Part shown: positions 2,558 through 63,041 of the stretch, piece after piece
Position numbering within the stretch: the stretch's first letter is position 1
How the letters are laid out: each line of letters begins with the position of its first letter
NCBI RefSeq assembly: GCF_000315625.1
Contig: NW_005434649.1
Location: forward strand, 434,001-498,000
Direction: 5' to 3'
DNA from: Guillardia theta CCMP2712
Lineage: Eukaryota; Protista; Cryptophyta
Length of the DNA: 64,000 nt
Position numbers and translations under genes: made by a program
Notes under the pieces: model-generated
What the model was told of the DNA's origin: nothing
Database searches by the model: none
Seen by the model: the letters and a program-made list of their open reading frames with translations, nothing else

Positions 2558-2956
2558 GCTGCTATGACGGCTGTGTCCCCACTTCTCCTCCTCCTCCTCC
2601 TCCTCCTCCCTCTCCTCCCTCTCCTCCTCCCCCCCCCCCTCTACATCCTATCTGCTTCCCTCGATTATCTCTTGCAGGAAGGCGCATTTGTCCTGGGGCT
2701 GGCTTGGTATCCTTCCTAGTCCCCCCCGCACCCCCTTGCTCCCTGCCTATCGGCTCCTTCGCTTCCTCCCCTCCCCCTCCCCCCTCCCCCTCTTCCTTGC
2801 TTGACTGTCTCCCTTGATCTCCCTGCCCTCCCTGCCCTCCCTGCCCTCCCTGCCCTGCCCTCCCTCCCCTCAATCGCCTCTCTTTCTTTCATCCTTGCGT
2901 TCTTCCCCCACCCCTCATTGCAGCGACACTAAGTTCACCTCTCCTCCTCCTGCAAG

Positions 2957-4255
2957 ATGCATGCTGACGCCACCCTGGTTGTTGTCGCCAAGTTCCCCGC
3001 GCCTGGCCGCTGCAAGTCTCGACTCGCTAAAGACGTAGGAGACGCTGCCGCTGCGGAGTTCGCCCGGACCAGCTTGTTGGACCTCGTCGAGCGCTTCTCC
3101 GCCTTCTCGTTCGAGGTGAGCTGTGCTCCTGCTACTGACGGTACCGGTCAGCTGAGGTCATGCTGGCAGCATGCTGGCGCCACGACGACCTTCGCTCGGC
3201 GCATCCTGCTCTACGCGCCTGAGGGAGCTCGGTCCGACTTCGTCCAGCTTCTGTCGAGCTCACTGGGCGACACGTGGGAGTCCTTCGAGCTTCAGCCCAT
3301 GCTGGGCATCTCGACCGAGGGGAAACCCAGTGGCCAGGCAGGACACGCGGACCTGCTCCTGTCTGTGAGTGCTGAGCTTGCAGCAGGGCTCCGACCTTGG
3401 AGCGTTTCTCTCCAACGCCCTCGAGCAGTTTGGGAGGGAGCGGCCCATCCTCTTCATCGGGACCGACTGCCTGACCCTCTCTGACCTCCACGTCCACACC
3501 TGCATCCTCGAAGCCTCGGCAGGATCCGCCTGCATGTGCCCAGCCGCTGGTCAGCTCGCCGCATGCTCCGCATACGTTCTGACGCGGTTCTGATGCAGAC
3601 GGAGGATACGTCGCCCTCTCCCTCCCTCCCGGCTCGTCCAAGGAAGTCTTTGCTAATGTTACGTGGAGCTCCAGGTCCCTCCTTGCCCTCCTCCTCTACC
3701 CCCTGCCCTCCTCCTCTACCCCTCTTCCCTCCTCCTCTATCCCCTTGCCCCCCTCCTCTACCCCCTTGTCCTCCTCCTCGTCCCCCTCTGCCCTCCTCCT
3801 CTACCCCCCTGCTCTCGTCTTCTACCCACTTGCCCCCACCGCCGTCCCCTCCTCTTCTTCCCAGGTGAGCTCGTACGTCCCTCTCATTGTCCTCCTGCAG
3901 TGTCACCGGCAAGACGCAGGTGGAGGCTCTGAGAGCGGCAGGGCTGACTGTCAGGTTGAAGGAGGGAGGGAGGGAGGAGGGAGGGAGGAGGGGGAGGAGG
4001 AGGTAGGTGAGGGAGGGAAAGGAGGAGGGAGGAGGTAGGTGAGGGAGGGAGGGGGAGGAGGTAGGTGAGGGAGGGAGAGAGAAGGAGGGAGGGAGCTGTG
4101 CAGTTTCAGGTGACTGTGTAGGCAGGATGGGGGAGGAGCTAGAGGACGTAGACGAGTTGCAGGATCTCCGTGTGGTGAAGGCGAAGCTTGACGAGCAGCC
4201 CGAGCTCAGCAGGCTCCTTCCTCGGAGCATGAAGTTCATGCAACAGCACCTCTAG
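2957..4255 (+). CDS. DUF2064 / TIGR04282-like GT-A fold glycosyltransferase (multi-exon)
   Basis: LVVVAKFPAPGRCKSRLA, QQGSDLG, ILFIGTDC, PA.DGGYVAL and LEDVDE motifs in successive exons; stop TAG at 4253-4255; long purine/pyrimidine-tract introns at ~3675-3900 and ~3955-4120. Confidence 0.75.
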
Positions 4256-8399: not shown

Positions 8400-8820
8400 G
8401 TCGAGGATGGGAAGAGCAAGAGGCTGGAACGAGAGACGCGATGAAAGGGGAGGAAGGGGGGGGAGGAAGGGGGGGGAGGGAGGGGGAGGAGGGGGAAGAG
8501 GCAGGGGAGGGGGAGAAGAGGATGGATAAGGCAAGGAAGGGAAAGGGGATGGGGGGTGTGCCTGCAGGAAGGGTGGATAGTAAGAAGTACCGGTGTATTC
8601 AAGATAATTTTTCAGGACAAATAAGGGGTGGAATTTTCGCTCAGGGGTAGGGGTGATTCTGTCGGGGAAACTAGAGGAGGGAAACAAGCAAGGAGTACAA
8701 CCAGCGTGACCCTGAAGAACTATCACTGTCAGTATGCGACCAAGGAGGAGGAGGAGGAGGAGGAGGAGAAGCAGGAGGAGAAGCAGGAGGAGCAGGAGGA
8801 GCAGATGCTTGCCATGCATT

Positions 8821-50918: not shown

Positions 50919-51319
50919 GTGAGCCTATTTCTGGAAAGATGACACTGAGGTAAGAGGGTGATGATTTGGCATTCGGCCCGGATGCCACTGAGGGCCGGGC
51001 CGCCCCGGCCCCCGCGATGCCGCCGCGGACCGTGTCGGACGGACTGGTGACTCCGGCCGGGCTATACTCGGTGACCGTGACGGTGACCCTTAAAGTCACA
51101 CTGTGACAAGTTAACTGAGTCAACTCCGATGATCGGCAGAGAGCGACGTGATTACATCAGTTATCATCCCCGCCGCTCAGTGGAACTGCAACCGGCCGGG
51201 CGGCCCGGCGGGCGGCTCGGAGGAGCCCCCCGCAGGCCGCCGCCGGCCCGGGGCCGCGCTCCGAGGCTCAAGTCATATCACTGAGAAGCAAACACCCACG
51301 TGGCTCCTACTCTGAGAGT

Positions 51320-51519
51320 ATTTATATTAAAGACCTTAAAGACCAATATGCATAAAAGCACTAAAAATGCATAAGTGAAATGCAAAATCCCATCTATTTC
51401 GAATTTCATTACAACTTAAATTTAAAGACCAAAAGATAAAATGCATGAATACTATTAAAATGCATGATTTCTAAAAATACATTTACATATACTACTAGTG
51501 TACTATAATATATTCTATA
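51320..51519 (+). repeat. Left terminal inverted repeat (200 bp)
   Basis: ATTTATATTAAAGACCTTAAAGACC...TATAATATATTCTATA; checked block by block against the right copy with no mismatch found. Confidence 0.97.
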
Positions 51520-51714
51520 GAATTTACAATAAAAATCTATTACCAGTCTGGTAAGGCCATTGCCATGCCCTTACGCAAGGGTCGCAAGCTTGCGTAGCAA
51601 GCACTAAGGCCATAGCACTGGCGTTAGCCATGTGCGTTATCTATAGCCACTCCTTTCAATCCAATATATGCTTTGCATAATCTATAAAAATACATATACT
51701 ATATATATTCTATA
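51520..51714 (+). repeat. Hairpin-rich ~200-bp repeat, unit 1
   Basis: TTTACAATAAA..ATCTATTACCAG...CCCTTACGCAAGGGTCGCAAGCTTGCGTAGCAAGC...GCACTGGCGTTAGCCATGTGC; homologous to the units at 54507-54989. Confidence 0.9.
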
Positions 51715-54505
51715 CATAGCGTTGTCGGGTCAAGGAACTTGCTGACAATTGGGATTTGTACCAGATCCAGGCGTTTTCCAGTACAAAATTGTGTGTAAGT
51801 AAAAAATCGAAGGATTGGAAGGTTTGAAAATCCATTTCCAGCGCTGCACGTTCAACGGCAACCGGGGGTAATTGAGAGCTTAGATAAGTAAACAGTTGTT
51901 CCTATTGCCTTTGCATAGGATCACTTAGGCCCTTGTATAGTGGAGTAATGATTTGTACCAGAACCTGATGGGTAGGCGTGGTAGTATTTCAAATATTCGA
52001 ACCCAACGGACGCGACAGGGGGGTGGGGGGTACAGGTCTTGGTCTGGTACTGTAATGGGTACCTTTTAAAATACATTTAGCAGAGGGGGTCTCCCTCCCC
52101 ATCTCCCTGCCCTCCGCACTTGCGCATCCCTATCCTTCCCTGTCCATGAGTCTCAGACTCTCGTCAGACCTTCCCTGATGACCCTCAACTTTCTTTGACG
52201 CTTCTGTCTGCCTTGTCCTTCCTCAACTTGCTGGAAATTCAAACTCTGAAACCATGCCCATGAGTTGACAAGCACTGAGTTTCTCAGTTTGAATGCGGGA
52301 GGAAAGATGATTCATGGAATGAAACTCAGTGGTTCATATTTCAAGCTGATGGATACGAGTCGTATAGCACTGGCTTATGACTGTCATTTTACTTCTCAAT
52401 GATACAGCATCACGAACTTGCTCTCGATCCATCAGTACTTGCAAAGGGTCATTTTTCAGACAGAACTTCGAGTCCATCTTTATTTTGCGTCGATCCACAC
52501 GATGACATCTGTTTGATACACTATGTTTGATGAATAGCAAGAAAGCAAGGCTGAACTGTGCACCGCTTGACTGAATTTTCTACAATACTCTTCAATTGTG
52601 TAAGAGAGCATGTCACATGTAATCATACCAGGCAAACAAGTCACAGTATCGCTCCAAACCGCGTTGTGCTTAAAACTGAGACTCTACATGAAGATGTTAT
52701 CGGACTAGTCGAATGATGTACAACTTTATGGTGATACGTGGTTTAGAACTGTTGCAAAGCGGACATGGGAATATGTAGCGGCCTAGGTGATGTTTTCAAC
52801 GTACTTCAATAAAACAATGCCAAGTTGTTGCTAACAACATCATCATTTTTACATGAGCCTGCATGACCTGATGTACATGTTAGAGAAGTCGATGCTCATT
52901 CATCAAAAGAGTGGTTAGACAAGAAACTGGTAGATGCTTCTGCGCAGCATTCTTGTGTATGTGGAATCGTGCACACTCACCGTCGTGTGGAAGTGTTTGC
53001 ACATTCTTCTGCGCAAGTCTCATACATTGTCCTTATCATCTGGAATGGTTGACTTTTGCTGCAAGTAATATGAGCAGCGCAAAGTTGGCAAACTTATCCA
53101 TATGGTTGGAATGCCGGCGATGCATTGCAGCCTGCATAGCACCTGAGCGCTTTGTTCCACTTATCGCTTGGTTCCAAACAATTGATGATATCGCAGCATG
53201 CAACTCGCATTGACCCAAGGGTGTCAAGCGAAGAAAAGATCAGGATGATGGAAGGGCGAGAATGCAGCGAATAAGAGAAGCTGGTCAGGCTCAGTTTACT
53301 TTGTGTAAGAAAATGCCAATGCTTTGTACATGTTAGGTTACAAAGAAAGAGGCAAGAAAGCTCTGGTATGATACTCGAGAAGAAAGATTTATTCAAAAGG
53401 GTATGTCCATTTTCATCTGCATGATTCAATCGGATCCAACATCAATTAACTGCTCCTGATACCATGTCAGTCTAGTCACAACAAAGATATCAGCACCTTG
53501 AAAATTTCTTGCTTCGACTCGAGGTGAAGGAAATGAAATATGATTTACAATGCTATAAGGGGTATCGTTTTGTCGCTCAAAGCGTCTTGATTGTAAGTCA
53601 TGAAATAGAACACGACATGCAATCAATTTGCAAGTCATGCCTTCATGTGGTACCTCATCACTGCCATTTGATGAATGCACTGGTATTCCTTGAAACTCTT
53701 TACATGCCTTGGCAATACACTTGCATATTGCTCAGACCGCCCTCAAGCCCGACTCTTTGCAGCAGATTCCTATGAAATAAGTATAGATCATGCTGTCTCC
53801 GTGACATGCTTCATGACTTCCTACTTATTGCTCATGAGAGTCAATGTCATCCATCGTACAGCGCCACTAGCGGACGGTCCGTGCAGAGTACTACTTATTC
53901 AAGCTGCTAAAATCTATGATGATCAACCCTCTTTACATGTGTTTGCAATCACAGAGATGTTTTCAGACTACTGCGCTCACACCAGATTCTGCAGGGATTG
54001 CCTCTGCTTGTCCTCGTCTGAGCTCTCCTGCTGCAGATGAGTCACGTCTGCGTAACAACATTCACTTGCTAACCTTGGATATGCAACCAGGGAAGGGAAG
54101 GGGCAAGGCTTGAGAGCTCCCTCTGATCTACAAGGGTGGTCTATGTTGGTCGGAGGCAGGGTAGGGTCCAAAACTTGACCCCATCGGAGAAGGCACTTTC
54201 ACTGGGAAACAGGTGGGTCCAAAGCATCATAGTTTGAACAGGGGAGGTACCGCATAAACTATTTTGGTACAAGTTTTCCTAACAGTACTTGAATATGTAC
54301 CATAAAATTGGTACTGTTGGTACAATTATTTGCTACCAGGAAGTACCCTACCCCCTTAAACAGGTCCCAACCAATTTGAATCAGCTCCCAGCCGTCTGAC
54401 CCACCCCAGACCCCAACTGCCATTTGCTATTCACATGTGTCGAAGGATACCCCCACAGAAAACTATTGGAAACCAGAGGGGTCAGTTGAGAGCGACAACG
54501 CTATG
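51715..54505. mobile_element. Nested ~2.8-kb putative DNA transposon (13-bp TIRs), non-autonomous or decayed
   Basis: CATAGCGTTGTCG at 51715-51727 and CGACAACGCTATG at 54493-54505. It interrupts the repeat array at a unit junction; GTAC motifs cluster at both ends; GC is higher than in the flanks; no recognisable transposase. Confidence 0.75.
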
Positions 54506-54506
54506 A

Positions 54507-54989
54507 GAATTTACAATAAATCTATTACCAGAATGATAAGGCCACCACACCGCATTTAGAAGAAGGTCGCCAAGTTTGTGAAACAAACCATAAGCCATAG
54601 CACTTGCGTAGCAATGTGCGTCATCTATAGCCACCCTTACAAACCTCCATTATGCTCTCAAACATATACTTTGCATAATTTATAAAATACATTTACATAT
54701 CCTATAAATATCCTATATTCTTTACAACAAATCTATTACCAGTTTGGTCAGCCATATGCATCGCCCTTACGCAAGGGTCGCAAGCTTGCGCAGCAAGCAC
54801 TAAGGCCTAGCACTGGCGTTAGCCATGTGCGTTATCTATAACCACCCTTACAACCCTCCATTATACACCGTCACACATACTTTGCATAATTTATAAAAAC
54901 ATATATCTTACATTAAATATCATATATTCCACAATAAAATCTATTACCAGTCTGGTCAGCCATCTGCATCGCCCTTACGCAAGGGTCGC
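54507..54989 (+). repeat. Hairpin-rich ~210-bp repeat, units 2, 3 and partial 4
   Basis: Units begin ~54507, ~54721 and ~54931, each with ACAA..AATCTATTACCAG followed by the hairpin cassette. Confidence 0.9.
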
Positions 54990-55039
54990 TACAAAAACTA
55001 CTCCCTCTCTGCAAAATATTCCTTAACAAAAATTTCACA

Positions 55040-56100
55040 GCACACAAAAATTATTCACCCTCAACCATCCTCACCCCTCCCCCTGTAATTAAATCTATAC
55101 ACCGTCAACCCATCCGCCCCTACATACTCACCATCCCTCATTATCAAACTCATGCTATCCTCCAATGCCTTCAACGCCTCCACATCCACATTGCTTGATC
55201 CCTTCTTTATCTCTAATGTCATCCTACACAAACCCCTCCTTACATTACATTTTTATTTTTCTATCTCCTACGCACCCCACCCACGCCTTTTTATCACCCA
55301 TATTCCTCTCATTCACTCCTTTTAATATTTTCTCCATTCACTTTATTCACTACCCCTCTCTATTCTCCATCCCTTTATTCACTTATGTATCACTCGTTTC
55401 CTCACCCATCATGTCTATCACCCCTAACGTCCTCTCTATCAATCTATCCCTATACCTCCTCCCACTCTCCAACCCCACAAAACGTGACATCCATATCATC
55501 CTACTCCACCTCTCCTTCATCACTACCCCATACAATCTCAACAACATCTTCACCCTCTTCCCCTTCTGCTCCCCTAATACATCCTTCATATCTATATCCA
55601 CCCTATCCATATCCTTCACCCTACACTTATAATTCCCCCTCTTGTCCCTCCTCATCCATACCCTCATCATTCTATCCTCACCCCTCCTCCTCAACGATCC
55701 TATCACCTCCCTCTCCGTTAAACCCCAATCACCTCCTTGCTTCCTCTCTACACTCTCCATTATCCTCCGTCTCTATCTCCTCTATCCTCTCACTAAACTC
55801 ACTCTCCACCCTCACCCTCCCCTCAACACCAACTCCACCTCACTCTTACCCTCACTCTCCATTCTTACAAATGGCGTCTCTATATCTATACTCCTACCAT
55901 CCATCCTCAACTTTATCATCCTCATATCACCCCTCTCCGAGGCTCCTTACAATCCCCTACACTTATCCTTGACACATCCAACTCACTCACACTCAACATA
56001 CCTTATCAGACTACTCTACCCCCTTTACATCCCTTTCTCATTTTTATACCCACATCTTCCCTCAGTCAATTACGGCAATACTCTTTGATATCCATCCTAA
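55040..56100 (-). pseudogene. Compositionally extreme, frameshifted coding remnant (possibly including a small jelly-roll/minor capsid-like gene)
   Basis: Plus strand is very G-poor. Minus strand reads protein-like in changing frames: MRMIKLRMDGRSIDIETPF.. / RVRVESEFSERI.. / ..NYKCRVKDMDRVDIDMKDVLGEQKGKRVKMLLRLYGV. Confidence 0.35.
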
Positions 56101-56300
56101 TATCCCCTTTATTAACCCTTTTCTAATTCGGACAAATCCCCCGGCTAAGTCAATTAACTTCTCCACTAAATGGAACCTTTCCCACAAAAAGGCGTGGGTC
56201 ACACCTATATCCTTTAATGTTATATATCCCTTACCATGCTTCGTATAAATATTATCATATGTATGATTTAAGACTTAATTAATAAACAAATGTACTAAAT

Positions 56301-56837
56301 ATGTCATGTAATGGCGATGGATCTTGTCTTGCACAAACAACCTCATCTAATGATTACGCATACCAGTTTGAATGTGCCCATCAATGCAAACCCCTTCCAT
56401 GCCCTAATTTTATCGTCTGTGATACCATTGCTCCACTCTGGCTTTTTAATATGCATAGTGGATTGTGTATGGGTTGTAATATAAAATTTGGGACTTGGGG
56501 TACTCAGACGGGCAAAGGAAAACTTGATTTCTTTGATGATCTTGAATGTCCAATATGTCTTCAAATTACAAAGTGTGTTTCTCAACCTAATTGCAATCAT
56601 TCAACATGCATCACTTGCTTCAAACGATGCTACTATGGTAAAGAAATGCCATCATTCCCTTATCCTCATTTAGAAGAAGAGTATTATAATGATTTTGATA
56701 ACAACAATTATCAAAACAATTCTAAATGGGACCCTTTCAGAAAAACAATTGATAAATTTGAATCTTCATGCGAAACTATTGAATACAATAACGCCAACGA
56801 AACTGTTCTCAATAAATGCCCATTATGTCGTAAATAA
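56301..56837 (+). CDS. Cys-rich protein with split RING finger (putative E3 ubiquitin ligase, giant-virus style)
   Basis: CPIC...C.H..C..C followed, after a ~60-aa insertion, by KCPLCR; extra N-terminal Cys cluster; intronless, AT-rich. Confidence 0.75.
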   Translation: MSCNGDGSCLAQTTSSNDYAYQFECAHQCKPLPCPNFIVCDTIAPLWLFNMHSGLCMGCNIKFGTWGTQTGKGKLDFFDDLECPICLQITKCVSQPNCNHSTCITCFKRCYYGKEMPSFPYPHLEEEYYNDFDNNNYQNNSKWDPFRKTIDKFESSCETIEYNNANETVLNKCPLCRK

Positions 56838-56887
56838 CTCATACTTAAGAAAAATACAATGTATTACATTATGACTTCTTTCTCATT

Positions 56888-57565
56888 ATGAACAAAGCTT
56901 GTAAAGTTCAATTTGGCAATGTTAAATTCAAAACTTACAAAGATGCTGAAGATTATGTCCGCAATCTTCTTCGTCAGATTGGAATTTGCAAGAGTGTTAA
57001 ACAACTTAACGATGGTAATGTTTTGTATCAACAACTCCTTGATATCGCCTCAAATCATCCTAACAGTTTAAATAAGCTTGCTAATGTAATTGACTTTTCA
57101 ATTCAACAAAGTTATATCAATAAAAGAGCATTAGCCTTGTTCATCATCAACAAAGATGGCTCTCTTCTTGATATCTCTTGGAGGATTTGTGTCACTGGAA
57201 AACCTAAAACTATCCGAACTGAGCTCTTATGCGCTTTACGCACATCTGTAGACCATCAGATTCTTGCTTTCAAAACAACTCATGATACCTCCTCCTGCTC
57301 TTTGTGTGGGACTTCTACTCTTAAATCGTTACATATCGATCATGATGTTCAGTTCATTCAACTTGTTGCTAATTTCTTGGATATTCAATCATCTTGTCCT
57401 ATCATATTCGATGACCTCAAAGAATATCCACATTCTCGGTATTTCTTTCCACAACATTTCAACTTTGAACAAGACTGGATCTCATTCCACCAACAACATG
57501 CCATTCTTCGGCCACTCTGTTCTCATTGTAATCTCTCACGACCCAAAATCACTAATTTACTTTGA
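56888..57565 (+). CDS. DCL/DUF3223-like domain fused to HNH-type endonuclease
   Basis: N-terminal HP....K ... FIINKDGS..DISWRICV (DCL-like); C-terminal CSLC...HIDH ... W..FH...A.LRPLCSHCN (Zn-binding HNH pattern). Confidence 0.7.
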   Translation: MNKACKVQFGNVKFKTYKDAEDYVRNLLRQIGICKSVKQLNDGNVLYQQLLDIASNHPNSLNKLANVIDFSIQQSYINKRALALFIINKDGSLLDISWRICVTGKPKTIRTELLCALRTSVDHQILAFKTTHDTSSCSLCGTSTLKSLHIDHDVQFIQLVANFLDIQSSCPIIFDDLKEYPHSRYFFPQHFNFEQDWISFHQQHAILRPLCSHCNLSRPKITNLL

Positions 57566-57605
57566 AGTCTTTTTTATATGTTCTTTTGTATTCGAGTTCT
57601 TCTTT

Positions 57606-58004
57606 ACCATTATGCTTTCGAAAATACCCTTAGGCTTTCAGCCATGCGCAGCACCGCCTTCATGCCTGAATAAAGGGGAGTCTAAGATCCTATCATACTG
57701 TCTCATAAGTCCTCACACTATTTAAACCAGCTTGGTAACACCCTATAGCCTTTACAACATCCTTGCATGCCCGACTCCCCTTTAATCCGGCCCTGACCGC
57801 TCCGTTTTTTATAAGAGTTTTTTGTCTGGTCAGGCCTTCCGTCAGGCTATTGAACACTCATTCAACAATCTTCCTCACCATCATGCTTTCGAAAATACCC
57901 TCAGGCTTTCAGCCATGCGCAGCACCGCCTTCAATTTGCCTTCATGCCTGAATAAAGGGGACTTTTAACCTACAAGGTTTGGTAACACCCTATGGCCTTT
58001 ATAA
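57606..58004 (+). repeat. Imperfect direct duplication with hairpin potential between convergent genes
   Basis: ACCATYATGCTTTCGAAAATACCCTYAGGCTTTCAGCCATGCGCAGCACCGCCTTCA..TGCCTGAATAAAGGGGGA at 57606 and 57877; TTGGTAACACCCTATRGCCTTTAYAA at 57732 and 57979. Confidence 0.9.
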
Positions 58005-58045
58005 GACTTCGCCTATATCATATGTATATTGATCCAAATAGTTCT

Positions 58046-61000
58046 TTATGGTGCTGCTAAAAAATTGAAACCTTTGATTACATCAATTATGTTTTCAATC
58101 TTATCTTGTTTTATCAGTATTAATTTGTAATCAAAATAACGATGTCTTTCTTTATTTTTTGTGTATTCTTTCTGTTTGCCTTCTGTTTTCATTTTACAAT
58201 TTAATAGTTTCTCTAGAAGGAAATTTATCTTACTTTCAGTTCTTTTGCTAAACTCTGGTTCCTTTAGTAAGAATTGGTTTATGAAACACTCATAAATCTC
58301 CTTTATCAACACCTCATTCTCACACAATCTCCTGCCTGATACATAACCCCTCTCAAGGGCATTGTGATCCCTCAGATCAATACCGAGCACATCAATAAGA
58401 TTGTCTAAGATATATTTCAATCTGTTATAAGTGTGCATAGCGTCATTCTGTATGATTACCTTAACAATGTTATATTTGTCTTGTGGCGAATTTAATACAA
58501 TGAGAGATGTAATGATGTTGTAAGGCTTTGTCATGAACTTGTCATATAACCTCTCATATTCCGTGAAGGGCAGCAATTCCTTGAATTCTATATTTTTTCC
58601 AGACATCTCATCCTTATATGTGGAAGTATATATCACGTCTGTAAAATACTTCGAATATATGTAAGTCTTAGTCAATGCCTTACGATCATTGCTGCTCTTC
58701 AACATATTCAGAATGTTTGTATATGCTATGTTGAAACCATAATATGTCCCTACATAACCCTCCCTTAACAACATATTGTGGAACTTTCCATACACAGGAT
58801 GATTATAGAAGCCATGAACTAAGGCCTCCTTCTCATCATGATCCTCCGGTGTTATATTATAATCTTCAGTTAATGCTTTATAAAGATCCTGATGGGTCCT
58901 GATACATCCCTTATCTACAAATAGGTTGTCCTTGTAACAATTGTCAATATGGTATTTAAATAACTCAATCAAAAAGGGCTTTGAGATATGATCTCTCTCT
59001 GCTATATCAATCCTGAGCCTCTCTTGCATCTCTCTATACGACGCCATCATGTTCTTATCGGTTCCATTGTATTTCTCTTTGATATGCCTCTCAATCTCAG
59101 ATCTATGAGGAGTATACCTATGCTCATAATCAAAATTCCTCTTGCAATAGATTATATTCAACTGATAGCCATCCTCATCGGTTTTTACGTATCGAAATCT
59201 TTGAGATGCCTGTATCATCTGATTTGTCTTTATGAAACCCTTCTCAATGTTCCCAAATTCTTCAATTATATGGATCTTCAAATCCCAATAATCAGGGGTC
59301 TCCTCGCTGAATCCAGTGCATATGGTGTTCGTGTGCAAGAACACCTGTACCTTGTCTTTTGCAATCAATGATGGGTTCTTTATATATTTATCAATCTCCT
59401 TATCCTTTTTTGTATCTCCTGTAACTATCACGGCCTTTATCCCTTCTCTTTCAAACCGATCCATAAACTTTTTCCTGTGCTTCTGGAACATCATTACACC
59501 GCACACATTCCGTCCTGCCTTAACATGTCTCACTATGTCTTCAAGTGCTAGATTCTCAACTGTATATTTGTCGCAATCTATCTTCTTTGAATACTTTGGA
59601 ATGTCACATGCTAGAACATACTTCTGTTTCAATCTTGTAGATGCTGTATGATAGAAAGATATTGTCTCCTGTTCATAGATAGATGCTAAGTTCTCGATGA
59701 AATTGACACATGGTTTAGATATATTGAATAAGGCATCTGCAAAGATTACCGCCTTAGCATTCAATATTACATTGTGCAGGATCTCATATATCTTGGTTCT
59801 GGTCTCTAGATCCTTTCTATCATCTGTAGTGCAATTCTCTAGAGCACCAATAGTCTCTTCTGCTTCATCTATAAAAACTAAATCATACTCTAAAAACTGT
59901 AACTTGTGCAAAGATTGTATGGAACACACAAGGCGTTGGCTATCGTAATTTGATCTGCTGGATGACTGATAGAGATTAAACAACCTTATATTGTCAAATT
60001 TCAGATCTTTTCGATGTTTGTTTATGGTCTTATTGAACCTTGAAGTAACAGAAGTCGCAAGATTGCGGTTTGCTATTATATTCAATACTCTATCATTTGG
60101 CTTTATAAGACCCAACATCTGTTCTGTCTTGCCATAACCACATCCTGCCGACAGGCATATGAACTTAGATGTTAATTGTATCATATCCCCATACCTTGGG
60201 TATGGCTTGACATTGAATATAGCTGGAAACTCATTGATTGGGATAACTGACCGTTTGAAGAGGTTACACTTAAACCATCCTGCCCATAAATCCTTGTTAC
60301 ACTTTGTAGCAAAATAATTAAGAAATCTATAAGGACCTAAAGGGTTAAATTCTCCCTCCTCTTGTTCTATCTTAGTCATAGAATAGTCTAATATAGACTT
60401 AATGAATTTATGATGTTTCTCTCTATCATTCTCAGCAATGGTTGGTATAACCTCCTTCAACCTCTTTATCATGGTTGCCATGTCCATTTTGTAGTAACCA
60501 GTTATGCCATTCTCATTGCACAGCCGCCTTAGTTGGTTTCTCTTTTGAAGGCTGTAGCTATGGCATTCTTCATATCCCTTTTCTGTCCAATTGAATATGT
60601 GCTCCCTGAAGACCTCAATCCTCTCTGAATAGTCTATAGGATTAGATCCTTGCAAGTCCTCAAAGAATTCCCTTGAAACACCAAGCAATACCTTGAATAT
60701 GGCTTTAACAATCCTGTACCATAGGCTAAAGTTTATGATGTTGATGTCATTCTTTATAGACTTTAAGCAACAGAGAATGTAATGATCATCATAGAATTCC
60801 TCTTGAGGGCTCTCTATGCTTAGCTTTATCTTAAGATCCTTCTTGATTGATTTTTTTATAATTGATGAATGTTTCTTATCTATGCCTGTTTCTCCTTTGA
60901 TTGTCTCTATTGGGATTATCACATTCTTTACAGTTCCATAGCTGCGTACAAGATACATGTAATAACTTAAACCTAAGGGTTGAACAGGTTTGAGGATCAA

Positions 61001-61810
61001 AGTGGAGCCCTTCTTGGATTGATAGGGCATGCGAAAGCACCTATTGTCTGAATAGATCCTAATATCTATGATTGGTTTAGGGAATTGGCTATCAAATAAG
61101 AAGAATTCAGAATCAAATAGATCTCTAAAGACTTGCCTCTGTTTCCATTCAAACAAGAAAGGGAGTATGATATGATACGAAACCTTATATGACCCTTTGC
61201 AGGATAATCCACAGGATTCTAGTATCACTGTATCATCCTTAGAAATGTTCAAATCAAAATGATTGTTTACAATGTTCACTAAGTTGGAACATAGGTTCAT
61301 AATCTTATCGAAAATAGGAAAGATGCCCTTCTCTCTCTGTTTATCATATTCTTGGGCCTGATTAATATTCTCTATGATATAATCTATATCAATAGGAAAT
61401 TTGACAAGATCATCATTTCCTAGTATCTCATATCCATGGAAATTATGTAGGAAGATAGGATGCTTATAATGCACCAATGCATACTGCTTGCTTCCAGGCT
61501 TAGCATCCGGGTCAGGAGTGTCTCTTGCAATCTTCACATTGGCTCTGTTCTTGATATGTAGATCACTTGTGTTCTGTAGAAGCCCATCCTTCCCATCCTT
61601 CAGACGATAAAACCAATTCACTTCCTGAATAAGTGTGGTTTGAAGGAATTCATACAGGATGTTACGGGTTTTCCTTTTGATACGCTCAAATTGTCCTAAT
61701 TGTCTTGCTTTCAATCCAATACGGACAAATGATCTCAACTCATTTGTCTTGAAGTGTTCATATATCGTATTGTCATCAGTATCTTCCTTAGATGGAAAAT
61801 ATAATCGCAT
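58046..61810 (-). CDS. AEP primase-polymerase (PrimPol) fused to UL9/origin-binding-protein-type SF2 helicase
   Basis: AEP motifs YE.......KFPIDID, KVSYH, IDIRIYSDNRCFRMPYQSK; PriCT-like FSLWYRIVKAI; helicase motifs AGCGYGKT, NRNLA, SIQSLHKL, VFIDEAE, VIFADA, TNTICTGFS, QASQRFR. Confidence 0.88.
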   Translation of the reverse strand: MRLYFPSKEDTDDNTIYEHFKTNELRSFVRIGLKARQLGQFERIKRKTRNILYEFLQTTLIQEVNWFYRLKDGKDGLLQNTSDLHIKNRANVKIARDTPDPDAKPGSKQYALVHYKHPIFLHNFHGYEILGNDDLVKFPIDIDYIIENINQAQEYDKQREKGIFPIFDKIMNLCSNLVNIVNNHFDLNISKDDTVILESCGLSCKGSYKVSYHIILPFLFEWKQRQVFRDLFDSEFFLFDSQFPKPIIDIRIYSDNRCFRMPYQSKKGSTLILKPVQPLGLSYYMYLVRSYGTVKNVIIPIETIKGETGIDKKHSSIIKKSIKKDLKIKLSIESPQEEFYDDHYILCCLKSIKNDINIINFSLWYRIVKAIFKVLLGVSREFFEDLQGSNPIDYSERIEVFREHIFNWTEKGYEECHSYSLQKRNQLRRLCNENGITGYYKMDMATMIKRLKEVIPTIAENDREKHHKFIKSILDYSMTKIEQEEGEFNPLGPYRFLNYFATKCNKDLWAGWFKCNLFKRSVIPINEFPAIFNVKPYPRYGDMIQLTSKFICLSAGCGYGKTEQMLGLIKPNDRVLNIIANRNLATSVTSRFNKTINKHRKDLKFDNIRLFNLYQSSSRSNYDSQRLVCSIQSLHKLQFLEYDLVFIDEAEETIGALENCTTDDRKDLETRTKIYEILHNVILNAKAVIFADALFNISKPCVNFIENLASIYEQETISFYHTASTRLKQKYVLACDIPKYSKKIDCDKYTVENLALEDIVRHVKAGRNVCGVMMFQKHRKKFMDRFEREGIKAVIVTGDTKKDKEIDKYIKNPSLIAKDKVQVFLHTNTICTGFSEETPDYWDLKIHIIEEFGNIEKGFIKTNQMIQASQRFRYVKTDEDGYQLNIIYCKRNFDYEHRYTPHRSEIERHIKEKYNGTDKNMMASYREMQERLRIDIAERDHISKPFLIELFKYHIDNCYKDNLFVDKGCIRTHQDLYKALTEDYNITPEDHDEKEALVHGFYNHPVYGKFHNMLLREGYVGTYYGFNIAYTNILNMLKSSNDRKALTKTYIYSKYFTDVIYTSTYKDEMSGKNIEFKELLPFTEYERLYDKFMTKPYNIITSLIVLNSPQDKYNIVKVIIQNDAMHTYNRLKYILDNLIDVLGIDLRDHNALERGYVSGRRLCENEVLIKEIYECFINQFLLKEPEFSKRTESKINFLLEKLLNCKMKTEGKQKEYTKNKERHRYFDYKLILIKQDKIENIIDVIKGFNFLAAP

Positions 61811-61856
61811 GCTACTTTGCTATTATAACTAATAAATTTGTTTATATGGTTTTTAC

Positions 61857-62162
61857 TCACTTATGTGGAGTATTAGCTTCATTCTTTTCCATAATCTTTT
61901 TCTGATAATACCTCCTACTTTGCTCCTTAATTCGTTCCCTATATTCTGGATCATTTTTGTACCTCTCATTCCTATATTTACGGATACTCTCATTAACTTT
62001 TTCTCTAAATTCAGGATTTGTCTCATACCGTATTCTATTGCATCTGTTTATTACATCATACACAACTGTCTTTATTGTTCCATCATCCTTCCTCCGTTGA
62101 ATAAACTCTTTTGATTTCTTCCGGCTATACTCTCTCTCCGCTGCTCTCTTCTCCTCTTCCAT
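61857..62162 (-). CDS. Small basic helical protein (putative DNA-binding, virus-like)
   Basis: 101 aa; repeated RY..NPE[FY]RE motifs and SRRYYQKK; same strand and just upstream of the PrimPol-helicase. Confidence 0.6.
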   Translation of the reverse strand: MEEEKRAAEREYSRKKSKEFIQRRKDDGTIKTVVYDVINRCNRIRYETNPEFREKVNESIRKYRNERYKNDPEYRERIKEQSRRYYQKKIMEKNEANTPHK

Positions 62163-62205
62163 GTTATTTATAACTATATATGGGAATTGTTTATGTATTT
62201 ATTGG

Positions 62206-62757
62206 TTATCTACACAATGATTTCATGCTGTTTTCTATTGTCTTGAGAAAATTAATTCTATTCTGTCTTGTGAAGGTCTTTATGTCATTAAAAGAACCCT
62301 TCAGTTTATTTATTATTGACACTACATCATCCTTATCCTTCTCTTGTGCTTGTTTCAACTTTTTATTCTCTGCTTTTAAATCTTCTATGATCTGTTTATT
62401 CTTCTTTATCTCATTCTTCAGGTCACGATTCGCCCCCATCAGATGTGCATTGTGTATAGATAAGATCGCATTCTCTCTTCTTTCTGTATCATTCCGCAAG
62501 TCTTGAAAGATTTGTACAAACTCTGAGATCACATCTGAATATGTTCTCTCTTTGTCTTCAATTTCATTTATCATCGCATAATCCTTGTATGTAAACCTCA
62601 ATACATGTTCTTTTGTGTATTGCGATTCACATAGCTTTATACGGTTATTGTATCTACATAAAGGACATTGAAACAATATTACTGGGTAATATTCTTCATT
62701 ATACTTCACTATATTCTTATCTCTACCATCTATCATATTATTCACATCATAATACAA
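62206..62757 (-). CDS. Hypothetical protein with CxxC motif and coiled-coil C-terminus
   Basis: FQCPLC, then heptad-rich LKNEIKKNKQIIEDLKAENKKLKQ; starts just inside the right TIR. Confidence 0.55.
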   Translation of the reverse strand: MYYDVNNMIDGRDKNIVKYNEEYYPVILFQCPLCRYNNRIKLCESQYTKEHVLRFTYKDYAMINEIEDKERTYSDVISEFVQIFQDLRNDTERRENAILSIHNAHLMGANRDLKNEIKKNKQIIEDLKAENKKLKQAQEKDKDDVVSIINKLKGSFNDIKTFTRQNRINFLKTIENSMKSLCR

Positions 62758-62841
62758 TGCAGCTTGCTCTGATAAATCTTTTAACTCATAATGTGATAAG
62801 ATCTCATTTATTCTTTCATTCGATCTGAATGAATCAAATAA

Positions 62842-63041
62842 TATAGAATATATTATAGTACACTAGTAGTATATGTAAATGTATTTTTAGAAATCATGCA
62901 TTTTAATAGTATTCATGCATTTTATCTTTTGGTCTTTAAATTTAAGTTGTAATGAAATTCGAAATAGATGGGATTTTGCATTTCACTTATGCATTTTTAG
63001 TGCTTTTATGCATATTGGTCTTTAAGGTCTTTAATATAAAT
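62842..63041 (-). repeat. Right terminal inverted repeat (200 bp)
   Basis: TATAGAATATATTATAGTA...GGTCTTTAAGGTCTTTAATATAAAT, the reverse complement of 51320-51519. Confidence 0.97.

What the first reader, a model, noticed from the sequence alone, without database searches (positions are those of the whole stretch)
51320..63041. TIR-bounded, apparently capsid-less and integrase-less virus-like replicon built around a PrimPol-OBP helicase
Seen: perfect 200-bp TIRs, a sharp AT enrichment, five intronless ORFs (PrimPol-SF2 helicase, DCL-HNH, split RING, two small ORFs) and a structured repeat array; about 8.9 kb once the nested transposon is removed. Known: Polintons/Mavericks carry pPolB, a retroviral-type integrase, an ATPase and capsids; Polinton-like viruses and virophages carry capsid genes; transpovirons are ~7-kb TIR-bounded linear DNAs with an SF1 helicase. 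Inference: this matches none of them fully. It could be a new class of small endogenous linear replicon or satellite that depends on a helper virus for integration and packaging. Identical TIRs suggest recent activity or ongoing homogenisation.
Basis: partly seen in the sequence, partly recalled or inferred. Interest (0 to 1): 0.92.

Follow-up and report, generated by a model that had tools for sequence, protein, structure and literature searches.

The report
Capsid-less TIR replicon with primase-helicase
A small, AT-rich, virus-like DNA element with perfect inverted ends sits in a GC-rich protist-like genome and carries its own primase-helicase but no capsid, packaging or integrase gene, so it resembles the plasmid-like transpovirons of giant viruses but uses a different replication enzyme.

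Summary
An 11,722-bp AT-rich block (51320-63041) is bounded by 206-nt inverted repeats whose first 200 nt are identical. It contains five intact ORFs, repeat arrays and one nested insertion of about 2.8 kb.

The 1254-aa ORF is an AEP (PrimPol-type) primase fused to a UL9/R8-type SF2 origin-binding-protein helicase. Family motifs, a profile search of solved structures and two fold searches all support this. That protein architecture is already known from giant viruses, mriyaviruses, malacoherpesviruses and some polinton-like viruses.

The less ordinary part is the vehicle. No capsid, packaging ATPase, polymerase or integrase was detectable here or on relatives' contigs of up to 12 kb. A three-gene core (RING/coiled-coil protein, small basic protein, primase-helicase) recurs in metagenomic relatives. 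A non-coding tandem repeat is conserved at DNA level with a relative whose replicase is only 39% identical, which suggests an origin.

Best reading: an integrated copy of a transpoviron-like, self-priming replicon that depends on a host or helper virus for polymerase and spread. Helper dependence is inferred, not shown. I rate it a new variant of a known kind, interest about 0.62. The host is unidentified and is not human.

The parts
51320..51525 (.). Left terminal inverted repeat (206 nt). It contains three copies each of the short motifs AAATGCAT and TAAAGACC.
   Evidence: For each motif, 6 of the 7 window matches lie in the two TIR arms, against 1.3-1.4 expected in the whole window.
51526..55012 (+). 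Left-arm subterminal array of about three 211-bp units, each with an iteron-like core (ACCAGNYTGGTMANSC) and small palindromes. The array holds one nested insertion of about 2.8 kb (44.6% GC, short inverted ends, no ORF above 121 aa). It is given as one part.
   Evidence: The core motif has 4 matches in the window, all inside the element, against 0.18 expected.
55013..56100 (+). G-poor tract of about 1.1 kb (G about 3.4%, C 41%, T 32%, A 24% on the + strand). The long ORFs here are open only because two of the three stop codons need a G. Most likely non-coding; role unexplained.
   Evidence: No counterpart in relatives.
56301..56837 (+). ORF of 178 aa: Cys-rich N-terminal part plus a complete C3HC4 RING with a long second loop. 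It ends just after the last Cys pair and has no coiled coil.
   Evidence: Pfam zf-C3HC4 is weak (E 0.03). The alignment with RING/coiled-coil proteins of relatives shows all eight ligand positions. The RING end followed by HNH is also seen in L014.
56888..57565 (+). ORF of 225 aa: DUF3223/DCL domain (N-terminal) plus HNH-type nuclease motif (CxxC..HxDH..H..CN). Intact.
   Evidence: Pfam DUF3223 E 3.5e-4, found in 9 of 9 family members. Pfam HNH in 1 of 9. phrog_28887 7.5e-14. PDB 2k0m 4.7e-5. Invariant residues. dN/dS about 0.21 among three copies.
57566..58045 (+). Internal tandem repeat, 2 x about 271 bp, non-coding. It is conserved at DNA level with the terminal or inverted repeats of metagenomic relative L001. 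Candidate replication origin.
   Evidence: It is 72-85% identical to L001 1-498 and includes a 33-nt identical block, while no coding DNA of the two elements aligns by blastn.
58046..61810 (-). Replicase ORF of 1254 aa, intact: AEP primase-polymerase, linker, SF2 helicase, C-terminal domain.
60911..61633 (-). AEP (PrimPol-type) domain, about residues 60-300. Motif residues D141 (DxD), S211/H213 (sxH) and D249 are invariant in the family.
   Evidence: invariant columns. Profile against PDB: human PrimPol 1.3e-4, poxvirus D5 AEP 1.3e-3. Foldseek top hit human PrimPol 1.6e-8, TM 0.59-0.62 on the target.
59111..60223 (-). SF2 helicase core, about residues 530-900: Walker A G558/K561, Walker B D648/E649, motif VI Q867/R871/R873.
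   Evidence: Profile against PDB: herpesvirus origin-binding protein 2e-20.
58049..59110 (-). C-terminal domain of the replicase, about residues 901-1254. It is covered by the full-length fold match to origin-binding proteins. Candidate DNA-recognition domain (inferred).
   Evidence: Model pLDDT 78.9, pTM 0.78. HSV-1 OBP is the top PDB hit at 1.1e-15 over about 800-900 columns. Giant-virus 'origin-binding protein / helicase-primase' proteins score 1e-21 to 1e-13.
61857..62162 (-). ORF of 101 aa: small basic protein with RYxNDPEYR-type repeats. It lies immediately upstream of the replicase in every close relative.
   Evidence: Weak phrog 'transcriptional regulator' match, 2.5e-5.
62206..62736 (-). 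ORF of 176 aa (from the first ATG): only the last Cys pair of the RING (CPLCR) followed by a coiled coil. It occupies the position held by a full RING/coiled-coil gene in relatives.
   Evidence: No RING front-half remnant in any frame between this ORF and the right end.
62836..63041 (.). Right terminal inverted repeat (206 nt).
56282..56291 (+). ATAAACAWWT motif 9 nt upstream of the RING ORF. Candidate promoter element; the other two copies are 61836-61845(-) and 62185-62194(-).
   Evidence: three matches in the window, all 9-25 nt upstream of element start codons, 0.13 expected. The motif was derived post hoc from these same regions.

Best explanation
This is an integrated, largely intact copy of a small capsid-less DNA replicon. 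It is about 8.9 kb of its own sequence plus one nested insertion.

The family core is three genes: a RING/coiled-coil protein, a small basic DPEY-repeat protein, and a replicase. The replicase fuses a PrimPol-type AEP primase to a UL9/R8-type SF2 origin-binding-protein helicase.

Proposed working (inferred):
- The helicase and its C-terminal domain recognise the iteron-bearing repeats, meaning the internal 2 x 271-bp array and the related cores of the 211-bp left-arm units.
- They unwind the DNA there, and the AEP domain lays down primers.
- No processive polymerase is encoded, so elongation needs a host or helper-virus polymerase.
- With no capsid, packaging ATPase or integrase, spread between cells would need a helper, most plausibly a giant virus, as for transpovirons.
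- The DCL-HNH nuclease is a candidate for end processing or for making the break through which the DNA enters a chromosome.

Shown: the anatomy, the domain identities, the conserved synteny, the conserved non-coding repeat and purifying selection on the HNH gene. Inferred: origin function, episomal life and helper dependence.
For: Boundaries and composition.

Replicase identity:
- Invariant AEP and SF2 motifs.
- Profile hits to herpesvirus OBP 2e-20, human PrimPol 1.3e-4 and poxvirus D5 AEP 1.3e-3.
- Foldseek top hits are PrimPol for the N-terminal model and HSV-1 OBP for the C-terminal model.
- Giant-virus OBP / helicase-primase proteins lead the viral library.
- The ORF is full length against its best relative: 39% identity, residues 61-1178 against 10-1131.

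No capsid, ATPase, polymerase or integrase family in any element ORF, nor on relatives' contigs of 5-12 kb.

The three-gene synteny is conserved in the window, L003, L006/7 and L008/9. The small-protein and replicase pair is also conserved in L001 and L004.

L010 repeats the convergent HNH and replicase arrangement.

The non-coding repeat is conserved with L001, where it lies at both contig ends in inverted orientation.

HNH dN/dS is about 0.21.

Links to giant viruses: an HNH homologue (41% identity) lies in a contig carrying RNR, Evr1/Alr, NUDIX, SNF2, capping-enzyme and FtsJ genes. Distant replicase relatives lie on a 527-kb IMG/VR contig and on a giant-virus MAG. Relatives' contigs have 17-38% GC.

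The architecture (TIRs, internal tandem repeat, helicase, zinc-finger proteins, no structural genes) matches the published description of transpovirons (PMC5499653, PMC11788076).
Against: - No free linear form, helper virus or second copy was observed. The source assembly and its reads were not available.
- All relatives' contigs are incomplete, so a morphogenetic module just off-contig cannot be excluded.
- Capsid proteins of small eukaryotic DNA viruses often escape sequence profiles, and I had no structure jobs left for the neighbours' ORFs.
- One distant relative (L017, 16.5 kb) carries a weak FtsK-like P-loop ORF and three unassigned ORFs of 451-542 aa, as a capsid-bearing virus would. 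L008/9 carry fibre-like proteins.
- The giant-virus early motif AAAATTGA is not upstream of any element gene.
- Transpovirons are known from giant-virus particles and genomes, not from cell chromosomes.
- No target-site duplication is visible, so the entry route is unknown.
Confidence: 0.5

Rival explanations
1. It is a deletion derivative of an integrated polinton-like virus or virophage. An internal deletion removed the capsid and packaging module and left the ends and the replication module.
For: - AEP-SF2 replicases occur in such viruses (bioRxiv 10.64898/2026.10.13.758929).
- Transpovirons themselves are thought to derive from polinton-like viruses by loss of the morphogenetic module (PMC5499653).
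- L017 looks like a capsid-bearing genome with a distant replicase.
- The RING architecture lies in two ORFs on opposite strands, and the L001-type terminal repeat is internal here. Both show that this copy has been rearranged.
Against: - Closer relatives (L001, L003, L006, L008, L010) show the same small gene set, with no recognisable morphogenetic gene on up to 12 kb.
- L001 (6.8 kb) is flanked by inverted copies of the repeat and has room for only three or four genes.
- HNH is under purifying selection across copies, and the replicase keeps every motif.
Confidence: 0.22
2. It is a self-mobilising replicase-nuclease module. The HNH nuclease makes a break and the PrimPol-helicase copies the element into it, in a homing-like or self-synthesising manner, without any helper virus.
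For: - HNH and the replicase are adjacent and convergent here and in L010.
- There is no integrase and no target-site duplication.
- This mechanism has been proposed for AEP and PolA replicases lying next to endonuclease genes (bioRxiv 10.64898/2026.10.13.758929).
- The same DCL-HNH family also occurs in a giant-virus-like contig and in a prokaryotic mobile-element context, as selfish nucleases do.
Against: - L001, L003, L006 and L008 lack the HNH gene yet keep the core, so HNH is accessory to the family.
- 206-nt perfect TIRs with internal short repeats are not a feature of homing elements.
- Only one copy is seen in 64 kb.
Confidence: 0.15
3. It is a fragment of giant-virus DNA integrated into the host chromosome.
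For: The nearest fold relatives of the helicase are giant-virus proteins. An HNH homologue lies in a giant-virus-like contig.
Against: The block is bounded by perfect 206-nt inverted repeats, is small, has no giant-virus core gene, and has a gene order shared with small metagenomic contigs.
Confidence: 0.05
4. It is an assembly chimera or contaminant joined to host sequence.
For: The composition jumps abruptly at both ends. No second copy or empty site could be checked.
Against: Both junctions fall exactly at the TIR tips. GC-rich sequence resumes on both sides. A nested insertion of intermediate GC lies inside the element, which points to residence in a chromosome.
Confidence: 0.03

Closest known systems
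Transpovirons of Mimiviridae and of pacmanvirus (PMC5499653, PMC11788076)
   Same: Small size (about 7 kb there, about 8.9 kb here). Terminal inverted repeats, an internal tandem repeat, one large helicase-containing replication protein and zinc-finger-type small proteins. No structural genes. AT-rich.
   Different: The hallmark helicase of transpovirons is an SF1 helicase fused to an inactivated PolB; here it is an AEP primase fused to a UL9/R8-type SF2 helicase. No membrane protein was seen here. Transpovirons are known in giant-virus particles and genomes, whereas this copy lies in a cellular chromosome. No helper virus is known for it.
R8 / pF1055L / UL9-like primase-helicases of Nucleocytoviricota, mriyaviruses, SmDNAV and malacoherpesviruses (PMC11253617; bioRxiv 10.64898/2026.08.29.747986)
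   Same: Same two-domain architecture with intact AEP motifs. The best fold matches are giant-virus 'origin-binding protein / helicase-primase' proteins and HSV-1 OBP.
   Different: Those genes belong to viral genomes of 35 kb to over 1 Mb that encode capsids. Here the gene is the centre of a small capsid-less element. Sequence identity to giant-virus homologues is only 22-31%. Only 26 relatives were found among 1.84 billion cluster representatives.
Polinton-like viruses and virophages with AEP-helicase replicases, and the proposed autonomous replicase modules (bioRxiv 10.64898/2026.10.13.758929)
   Same: AEP-SF2 fusions, TIRs, integration into protist genomes, and frequent neighbouring endonuclease genes.
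   Different: No major or minor capsid protein, packaging ATPase or protease was detectable. The RING/coiled-coil plus DPEY-protein core and the conserved non-coding repeat are not described there, as far as I could read.
Polintons / Mavericks
   Same: TIR-bounded and self-replicating in concept.
   Different: No protein-primed PolB, no rve integrase, no capsid module and no 6-bp target-site duplication.
Archaeal pRN1-type plasmids with a prim-pol/helicase replicase (from my own knowledge, not tested here)
   Same: A plasmid whose single large replication protein combines an AEP prim-pol with a helicase and recognises its own origin.
   Different: Those plasmids are circular and archaeal and use an SF3 helicase. 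No homology beyond the AEP fold is expected.

Membership tests
Transpoviron | Small (about 7 kb) linear dsDNA with terminal inverted repeats | tested here: inconclusive
   TIRs of 206 nt and about 8.9 kb of own sequence. Only an integrated copy was seen, so a linear episome was not testable.
Transpoviron | Internal tandem repeat | tested here: met
   2 x about 271 bp at 57566-58045. The feature is described in PMC11788076.
Transpoviron | Tlr1-like SF1 helicase fused to an inactivated family B polymerase | tested here: not met
   The replicase is AEP plus an SF2 OBP-type helicase. No PolB or SF1 match was found.
Transpoviron | No virion structural genes | tested here: met
   No capsid or ATPase family in any ORF. 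This is at sequence-profile level only.
Transpoviron | Propagates in giant-virus particles or genomes; genes carry the helper's promoters | not testable with these tools
   No helper is known. AAAATTGA is absent upstream of the genes. An element-specific motif, ATAAACAWWT, is present instead.
Polinton / Maverick | Protein-primed PolB and rve-type integrase | tested here: not met
Polinton / Maverick | Double and single jelly-roll capsid proteins, packaging ATPase, maturation protease | tested here: not met
   No ORF is long enough other than the replicase, and there are no family hits.
Polinton / Maverick | Target-site duplication of 6 bp | tested here: not met
   The flanks at 51319 and 63042 show no duplication.
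Polinton-like virus / virophage | Morphogenetic module (major capsid protein, penton protein, A32-like ATPase) | tested here: not met
   for this copy. For relatives' contigs it was tested only by Pfam and PDB sequence search, not by fold.
AEP superfamily, PrimPol / giant-virus / herpesvirus clade | Catalytic motifs DxD, sxH and hD, and the AEP fold | tested here: met
   D141, S211/H213 and D249 are invariant. PrimPol, D5/E5, UL52 and ASFV PrimPol are the top fold hits.
UL9 / R8 / pF1055L-type SF2 origin-binding helicase | SF2 motifs I, II and VI, and a fold match that extends through the C-terminal domain | tested here: met
   G558/K561, D648/E649 and Q867/R871/R873. OBP 2e-20 by profile. OBP is the top fold hit over about 800-900 columns, five orders of magnitude ahead of generic SF2 helicases. 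Giant-virus OBP-like proteins lead the viral library.
UL9 / R8 / pF1055L-type SF2 origin-binding helicase | Sequence-specific binding to origin repeats | not testable with these tools
   Candidate sites only.
DUF3223 (DCL)-HNH nuclease | DUF3223 domain plus a Cys-bracketed HxDH..H motif | tested here: met
   The Pfam HNH model itself matches only 1 of 9 family members.
RING (C3HC4) finger | Eight zinc ligands with canonical spacing | tested here: inconclusive
   All eight ligand positions are present in the 178-aa ORF, but the second loop is longer than canonical and Pfam is below its cut-off (E 0.03). The 176-aa ORF keeps only the last Cys pair.

The most novel reading that the evidence does not exclude
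The element represents an unrecognised lineage of eukaryotic capsid-less, self-priming linear replicons. The lineage is defined by an AEP/OBP-type primase-helicase, a RING/coiled-coil protein, a DPEY-repeat protein and a conserved iteron-bearing origin repeat. It would have arisen independently of the SF1-helicase transpovirons and could reside in cell chromosomes as well as, presumably, travel with a giant virus. That would make 'transpoviron-like' a convergent lifestyle rather than one family.
Probability: 0.35. Interest if true: 0.8.

Novelty: new variant of a known kind. Interest (0 to 1): 0.62.

Why it matters
Known capsid-less satellites of giant viruses (transpovirons) all use one helicase type and have only been seen inside giant-virus particles or genomes. 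Earlier 'integrated transpovirons' in an alga turned out to be capsid-bearing viruses (PMC5499653).

A clean, nearly intact, TIR-bounded element with a different replicase and no morphogenetic or integration gene, sitting in a cellular chromosome, would do three things:
- show that replication modules of small eukaryotic DNA viruses can live on their own, as a 2026 preprint proposes;
- give a compact natural pairing of a primase-helicase with its probable origin repeats;
- offer a marker for past giant-virus contact in an unidentified protist lineage.

If it is instead a deletion remnant, it is an ordinary endogenous viral fragment.

Tried and rejected
- Direct searches with the replicase found nothing: Pfam, NCBIfam and PDB and the word-indexed protein search. 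Only the exhaustive representative search found relatives.
- An exact-protein look-up of the replicase found no record.
- Pattern scans of IMG/VR, JGI metagenomes and GTDB genomes with close-family alignments found no relatives. One IMG/VR scan found five distant relatives. Two scan requests failed for lack of a conserved stretch.
- Exact-pattern scans for the conserved repeat block and for the TIR tip found nothing.
- Host identification failed. There were no tRNA or Rfam hits, and the giant flank protein has no relative above 34% identity. Sample accessions of the relatives are not named in the paper library.
- The bacterial promoter and terminator scan was at chance level.
- The 13-nt motif GTCTGGTCAGGCC alone is not enriched at window scale.
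- Sequence searches of large unassigned ORFs of L017 and L006 against solved structures gave nothing.
- Small-protein and RING homologues are absent next to the distant giant-virus replicase genes.
- A coding role for the G-poor tract is rejected, because all three + frames are open for compositional reasons.

Full report
**1. The observation**

The two arms 51320-51525 and 62836-63041 are 206 nt long and 99% complementary. The first 200 nt are identical. This is the only long inverted repeat in the 64 kb.

GC falls from 0.51-0.61 in the flanks to 0.27-0.44 inside, and it changes at the TIR tips.

Each TIR arm carries three copies each of AAATGCAT and TAAAGACC. For each motif 6 of the 7 window matches lie in the arms, against about 1.3 expected.

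No target-site duplication is visible at the junctions.

The order of features from left to right is:
- TIR.
- About three 211-bp units, with one nested insertion of about 2.8 kb inside the array. The insertion has 44.6% GC, short inverted ends and no ORF above 121 aa.
- A 1.1-kb tract with only about 3.4% G.
- RING ORF (+).
- DCL-HNH ORF (+).
- A 2 x 271-bp tandem repeat.
- Replicase (-).
- 101-aa ORF (-).
- 176-aa ORF (-).
- TIR.

**2. The replicase**

The 1254-aa protein matches nothing directly. An exhaustive search of 1.84 billion representatives found 26 relatives. The best is 39% identical along the whole length.

In an alignment of 12 relatives the following are invariant or nearly so:
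- AEP motifs: D141 of DxD, S211/H213, D249, R260, K266.
- SF2 motifs: G558/K561, D648/E649, Q867/R871/R873.

The family profile hits herpesvirus origin-binding protein (2e-20), human PrimPol (1.3e-4) and the poxvirus D5 AEP domain (1.3e-3).

Two AlphaFold models were built:
- Residues 1-479, pLDDT 73.5. Foldseek puts human PrimPol first, then poxvirus D5/E5, herpesvirus UL52 and ASFV PrimPol.
- Residues 480-1254, pLDDT 78.9, pTM 0.78. HSV-1 OBP comes first at 1.1e-15 over about 800-900 columns, and generic SF2 helicases follow at 1e-10.

In the viral structure library the leaders are giant-virus 'origin-binding protein' or 'helicase-primase' proteins from Marseillevirus, Samba virus, Indivirus, Bodo saltans virus, Catovirus and Pyramimonas orientalis virus.

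This architecture is known from the literature. It is described for mimivirus R8, ASFV pF1055L, some mriyaviruses, SmDNAV and malacoherpesviruses (PMC11253617; bioRxiv 10.64898/2026.08.29.747986). It is also a 'sizable minority' of the AEP-helicase fusions of polinton-like viruses and virophages (bioRxiv 10.64898/2026.10.13.758929).

**3. The other genes**

*225-aa ORF.* It has a DUF3223/DCL domain, found in 9 of 9 family members, and a Cys-bracketed HxDH..H motif.
- Close copies lie on two Logan contigs: 84% identity on L014 and 75% on L010.
- L010 repeats the convergent HNH and replicase arrangement.
- dN/dS among the three copies is about 0.21.
- More distant homologues sit in a giant-virus-like contig and in a prokaryotic mobile-element context.

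*101-aa ORF.* It has homologues immediately upstream of the replicase in L001, L003, L004, L006/7 and L008/9, with an invariant Y..D.E signature.

*RING and coiled coil.* In L003, L006 and L008 the gene before the small ORF is a RING followed by a coiled coil. L004 shows the same but is cut by the contig end, and L002 has a short RING ORF on the opposite strand. In the window that architecture is present as two separate intact ORFs:
- the 178-aa ORF holds the whole RING;
- the 176-aa ORF holds only the last Cys pair plus the coiled coil.

No RING front half remains upstream of the 176-aa ORF.

*Count of damage.*
- Replicase, HNH and small ORF: no stops or frameshifts.
- RING/coiled-coil architecture: one split into two ORFs.
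- Non-coding left-arm array: one nested insertion.

**4. Conserved non-coding DNA**

The internal repeat (57566-58045) is the only part of the element that aligns by blastn with L001. It is 72-85% identical and includes a 33-nt identical block, while the replicases are only 39% identical.

In L001 the unit occurs twice at the left contig end and once, inverted, at the right end. The unit therefore forms that element's inverted ends.

A related core, ACCAGNYTGGTMANSC, occurs in the 211-bp units and in the internal repeat: four matches, all in the element, against 0.18 expected. Because the pattern was derived from these same repeats, the enrichment is descriptive and not an independent test.

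The best reading is a cis-acting replication site. That is an inference.

**5. What is missing, and the relatives**

No capsid, packaging ATPase, protease, polymerase, integrase or recombinase family was found in the element. None was found on the relatives' contigs either.

Three observations complicate this:
- One relative fuses a complete family B polymerase to the replicase (L003).
- L008/9 carry fibre-like proteins.
- Distant relative L017 (16.5 kb) has a weak FtsK-like ORF and three unassigned ORFs of 451-542 aa. Capsid-bearing viruses with distant versions of this replicase therefore probably exist.

The relatives' contigs are incomplete, and I could not fold their ORFs. The capsid-less state of the family is supported but not proven.

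**6. Mechanism and verdict**

The most likely reading (about 0.5) is an integrated copy of a transpoviron-like, capsid-less replicon.
- It recognises its own repeats through the OBP-type helicase.
- It primes with its AEP domain.
- It borrows a polymerase and a vehicle from the host or from a giant virus.
- The HNH nuclease is a possible entry or end-processing enzyme.

It shares the published transpoviron architecture: TIRs, internal tandem repeat, helicase, zinc-finger proteins and no structural genes (PMC5499653, PMC11788076). It fails that family's hallmark, the SF1 helicase fused to an inactivated PolB, so I do not file it as a transpoviron.

Rivals, in order:
1. A deletion remnant of a polinton-like virus.
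2. A helper-independent nuclease-plus-replicase module.
3. A giant-virus fragment.
4. An assembly chimera.

Novelty: new variant of a known kind. Interest: 0.62.

Noticed in passing
window 16310-49276 (-): A single uninterrupted ORF of 10,988 aa made of IPT/TIG repeats with Calx-beta and laminin-G-like domains. Its best database relative is only 34% identical, so the host lineage is poorly sampled.
   Followed up: partly
window 2579-2820, 3678-3837, 3942-4101, 8418-8541: Long strand-asymmetric polypurine and polypyrimidine low-complexity tracts in the host flank. The element's own G-poor tract (55013-56100) has a similar one-strand bias but lower GC.
   Followed up: no
window 55013-56100: A 1.1-kb tract with about 3.4% G on the + strand inside the element. 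It has no internal repeats, no counterpart in relatives and no convincing coding potential. Unexplained.
   Followed up: partly
L003 4686-11426: A 2246-aa protein on a 12-kb metagenomic contig joins the same AEP-SF2 replicase to a complete family B DNA polymerase (exonuclease and polymerase domains).
   Followed up: partly
L011 10001-10732 (and L012): A DCL-HNH homologue (41% identity) lies in a 56.6-kb contig with ribonucleotide reductase, Evr1/Alr, NUDIX, capping enzyme and FtsJ genes. It sits directly upstream of an SNF2-type helicase. The gene content is giant-virus-like.
   Followed up: partly
L001 2527-2610 and 6704-6787: Two 84-nt copies (94% complementary), each itself a palindrome, bracket the small-protein and replicase gene pair of the closest relative.
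   Followed up: no
L017 (about 500, 3780, 8015, 8520, 9485, 10795, 13620): At least seven copies of a 59-70-nt palindromic intergenic element in a 16.5-kb IMG/VR contig. The contig also has a distant AEP(PriCT-2)-SF2 replicase, two RING proteins and a weak FtsK-like ORF.
   Followed up: no
L008 2-4672 (and L009): Two fibre-like proteins (RCC1 repeats plus Peptidase_S74; Gly_rich_2 plus Peptidase_S74) lie upstream of the RING, small-protein and replicase core on 12-kb contigs.
   Followed up: no
L001 1605-2489: A SET-domain protein occupies the position that the RING/coiled-coil gene holds in other relatives.
   Followed up: no
window, inside the left-arm repeat array: The nested insertion (about 2.8 kb, 44.6% GC, short inverted ends, no long ORF) has no second copy in the window. 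It looks like a non-autonomous DNA transposon of the host.
   Followed up: partly
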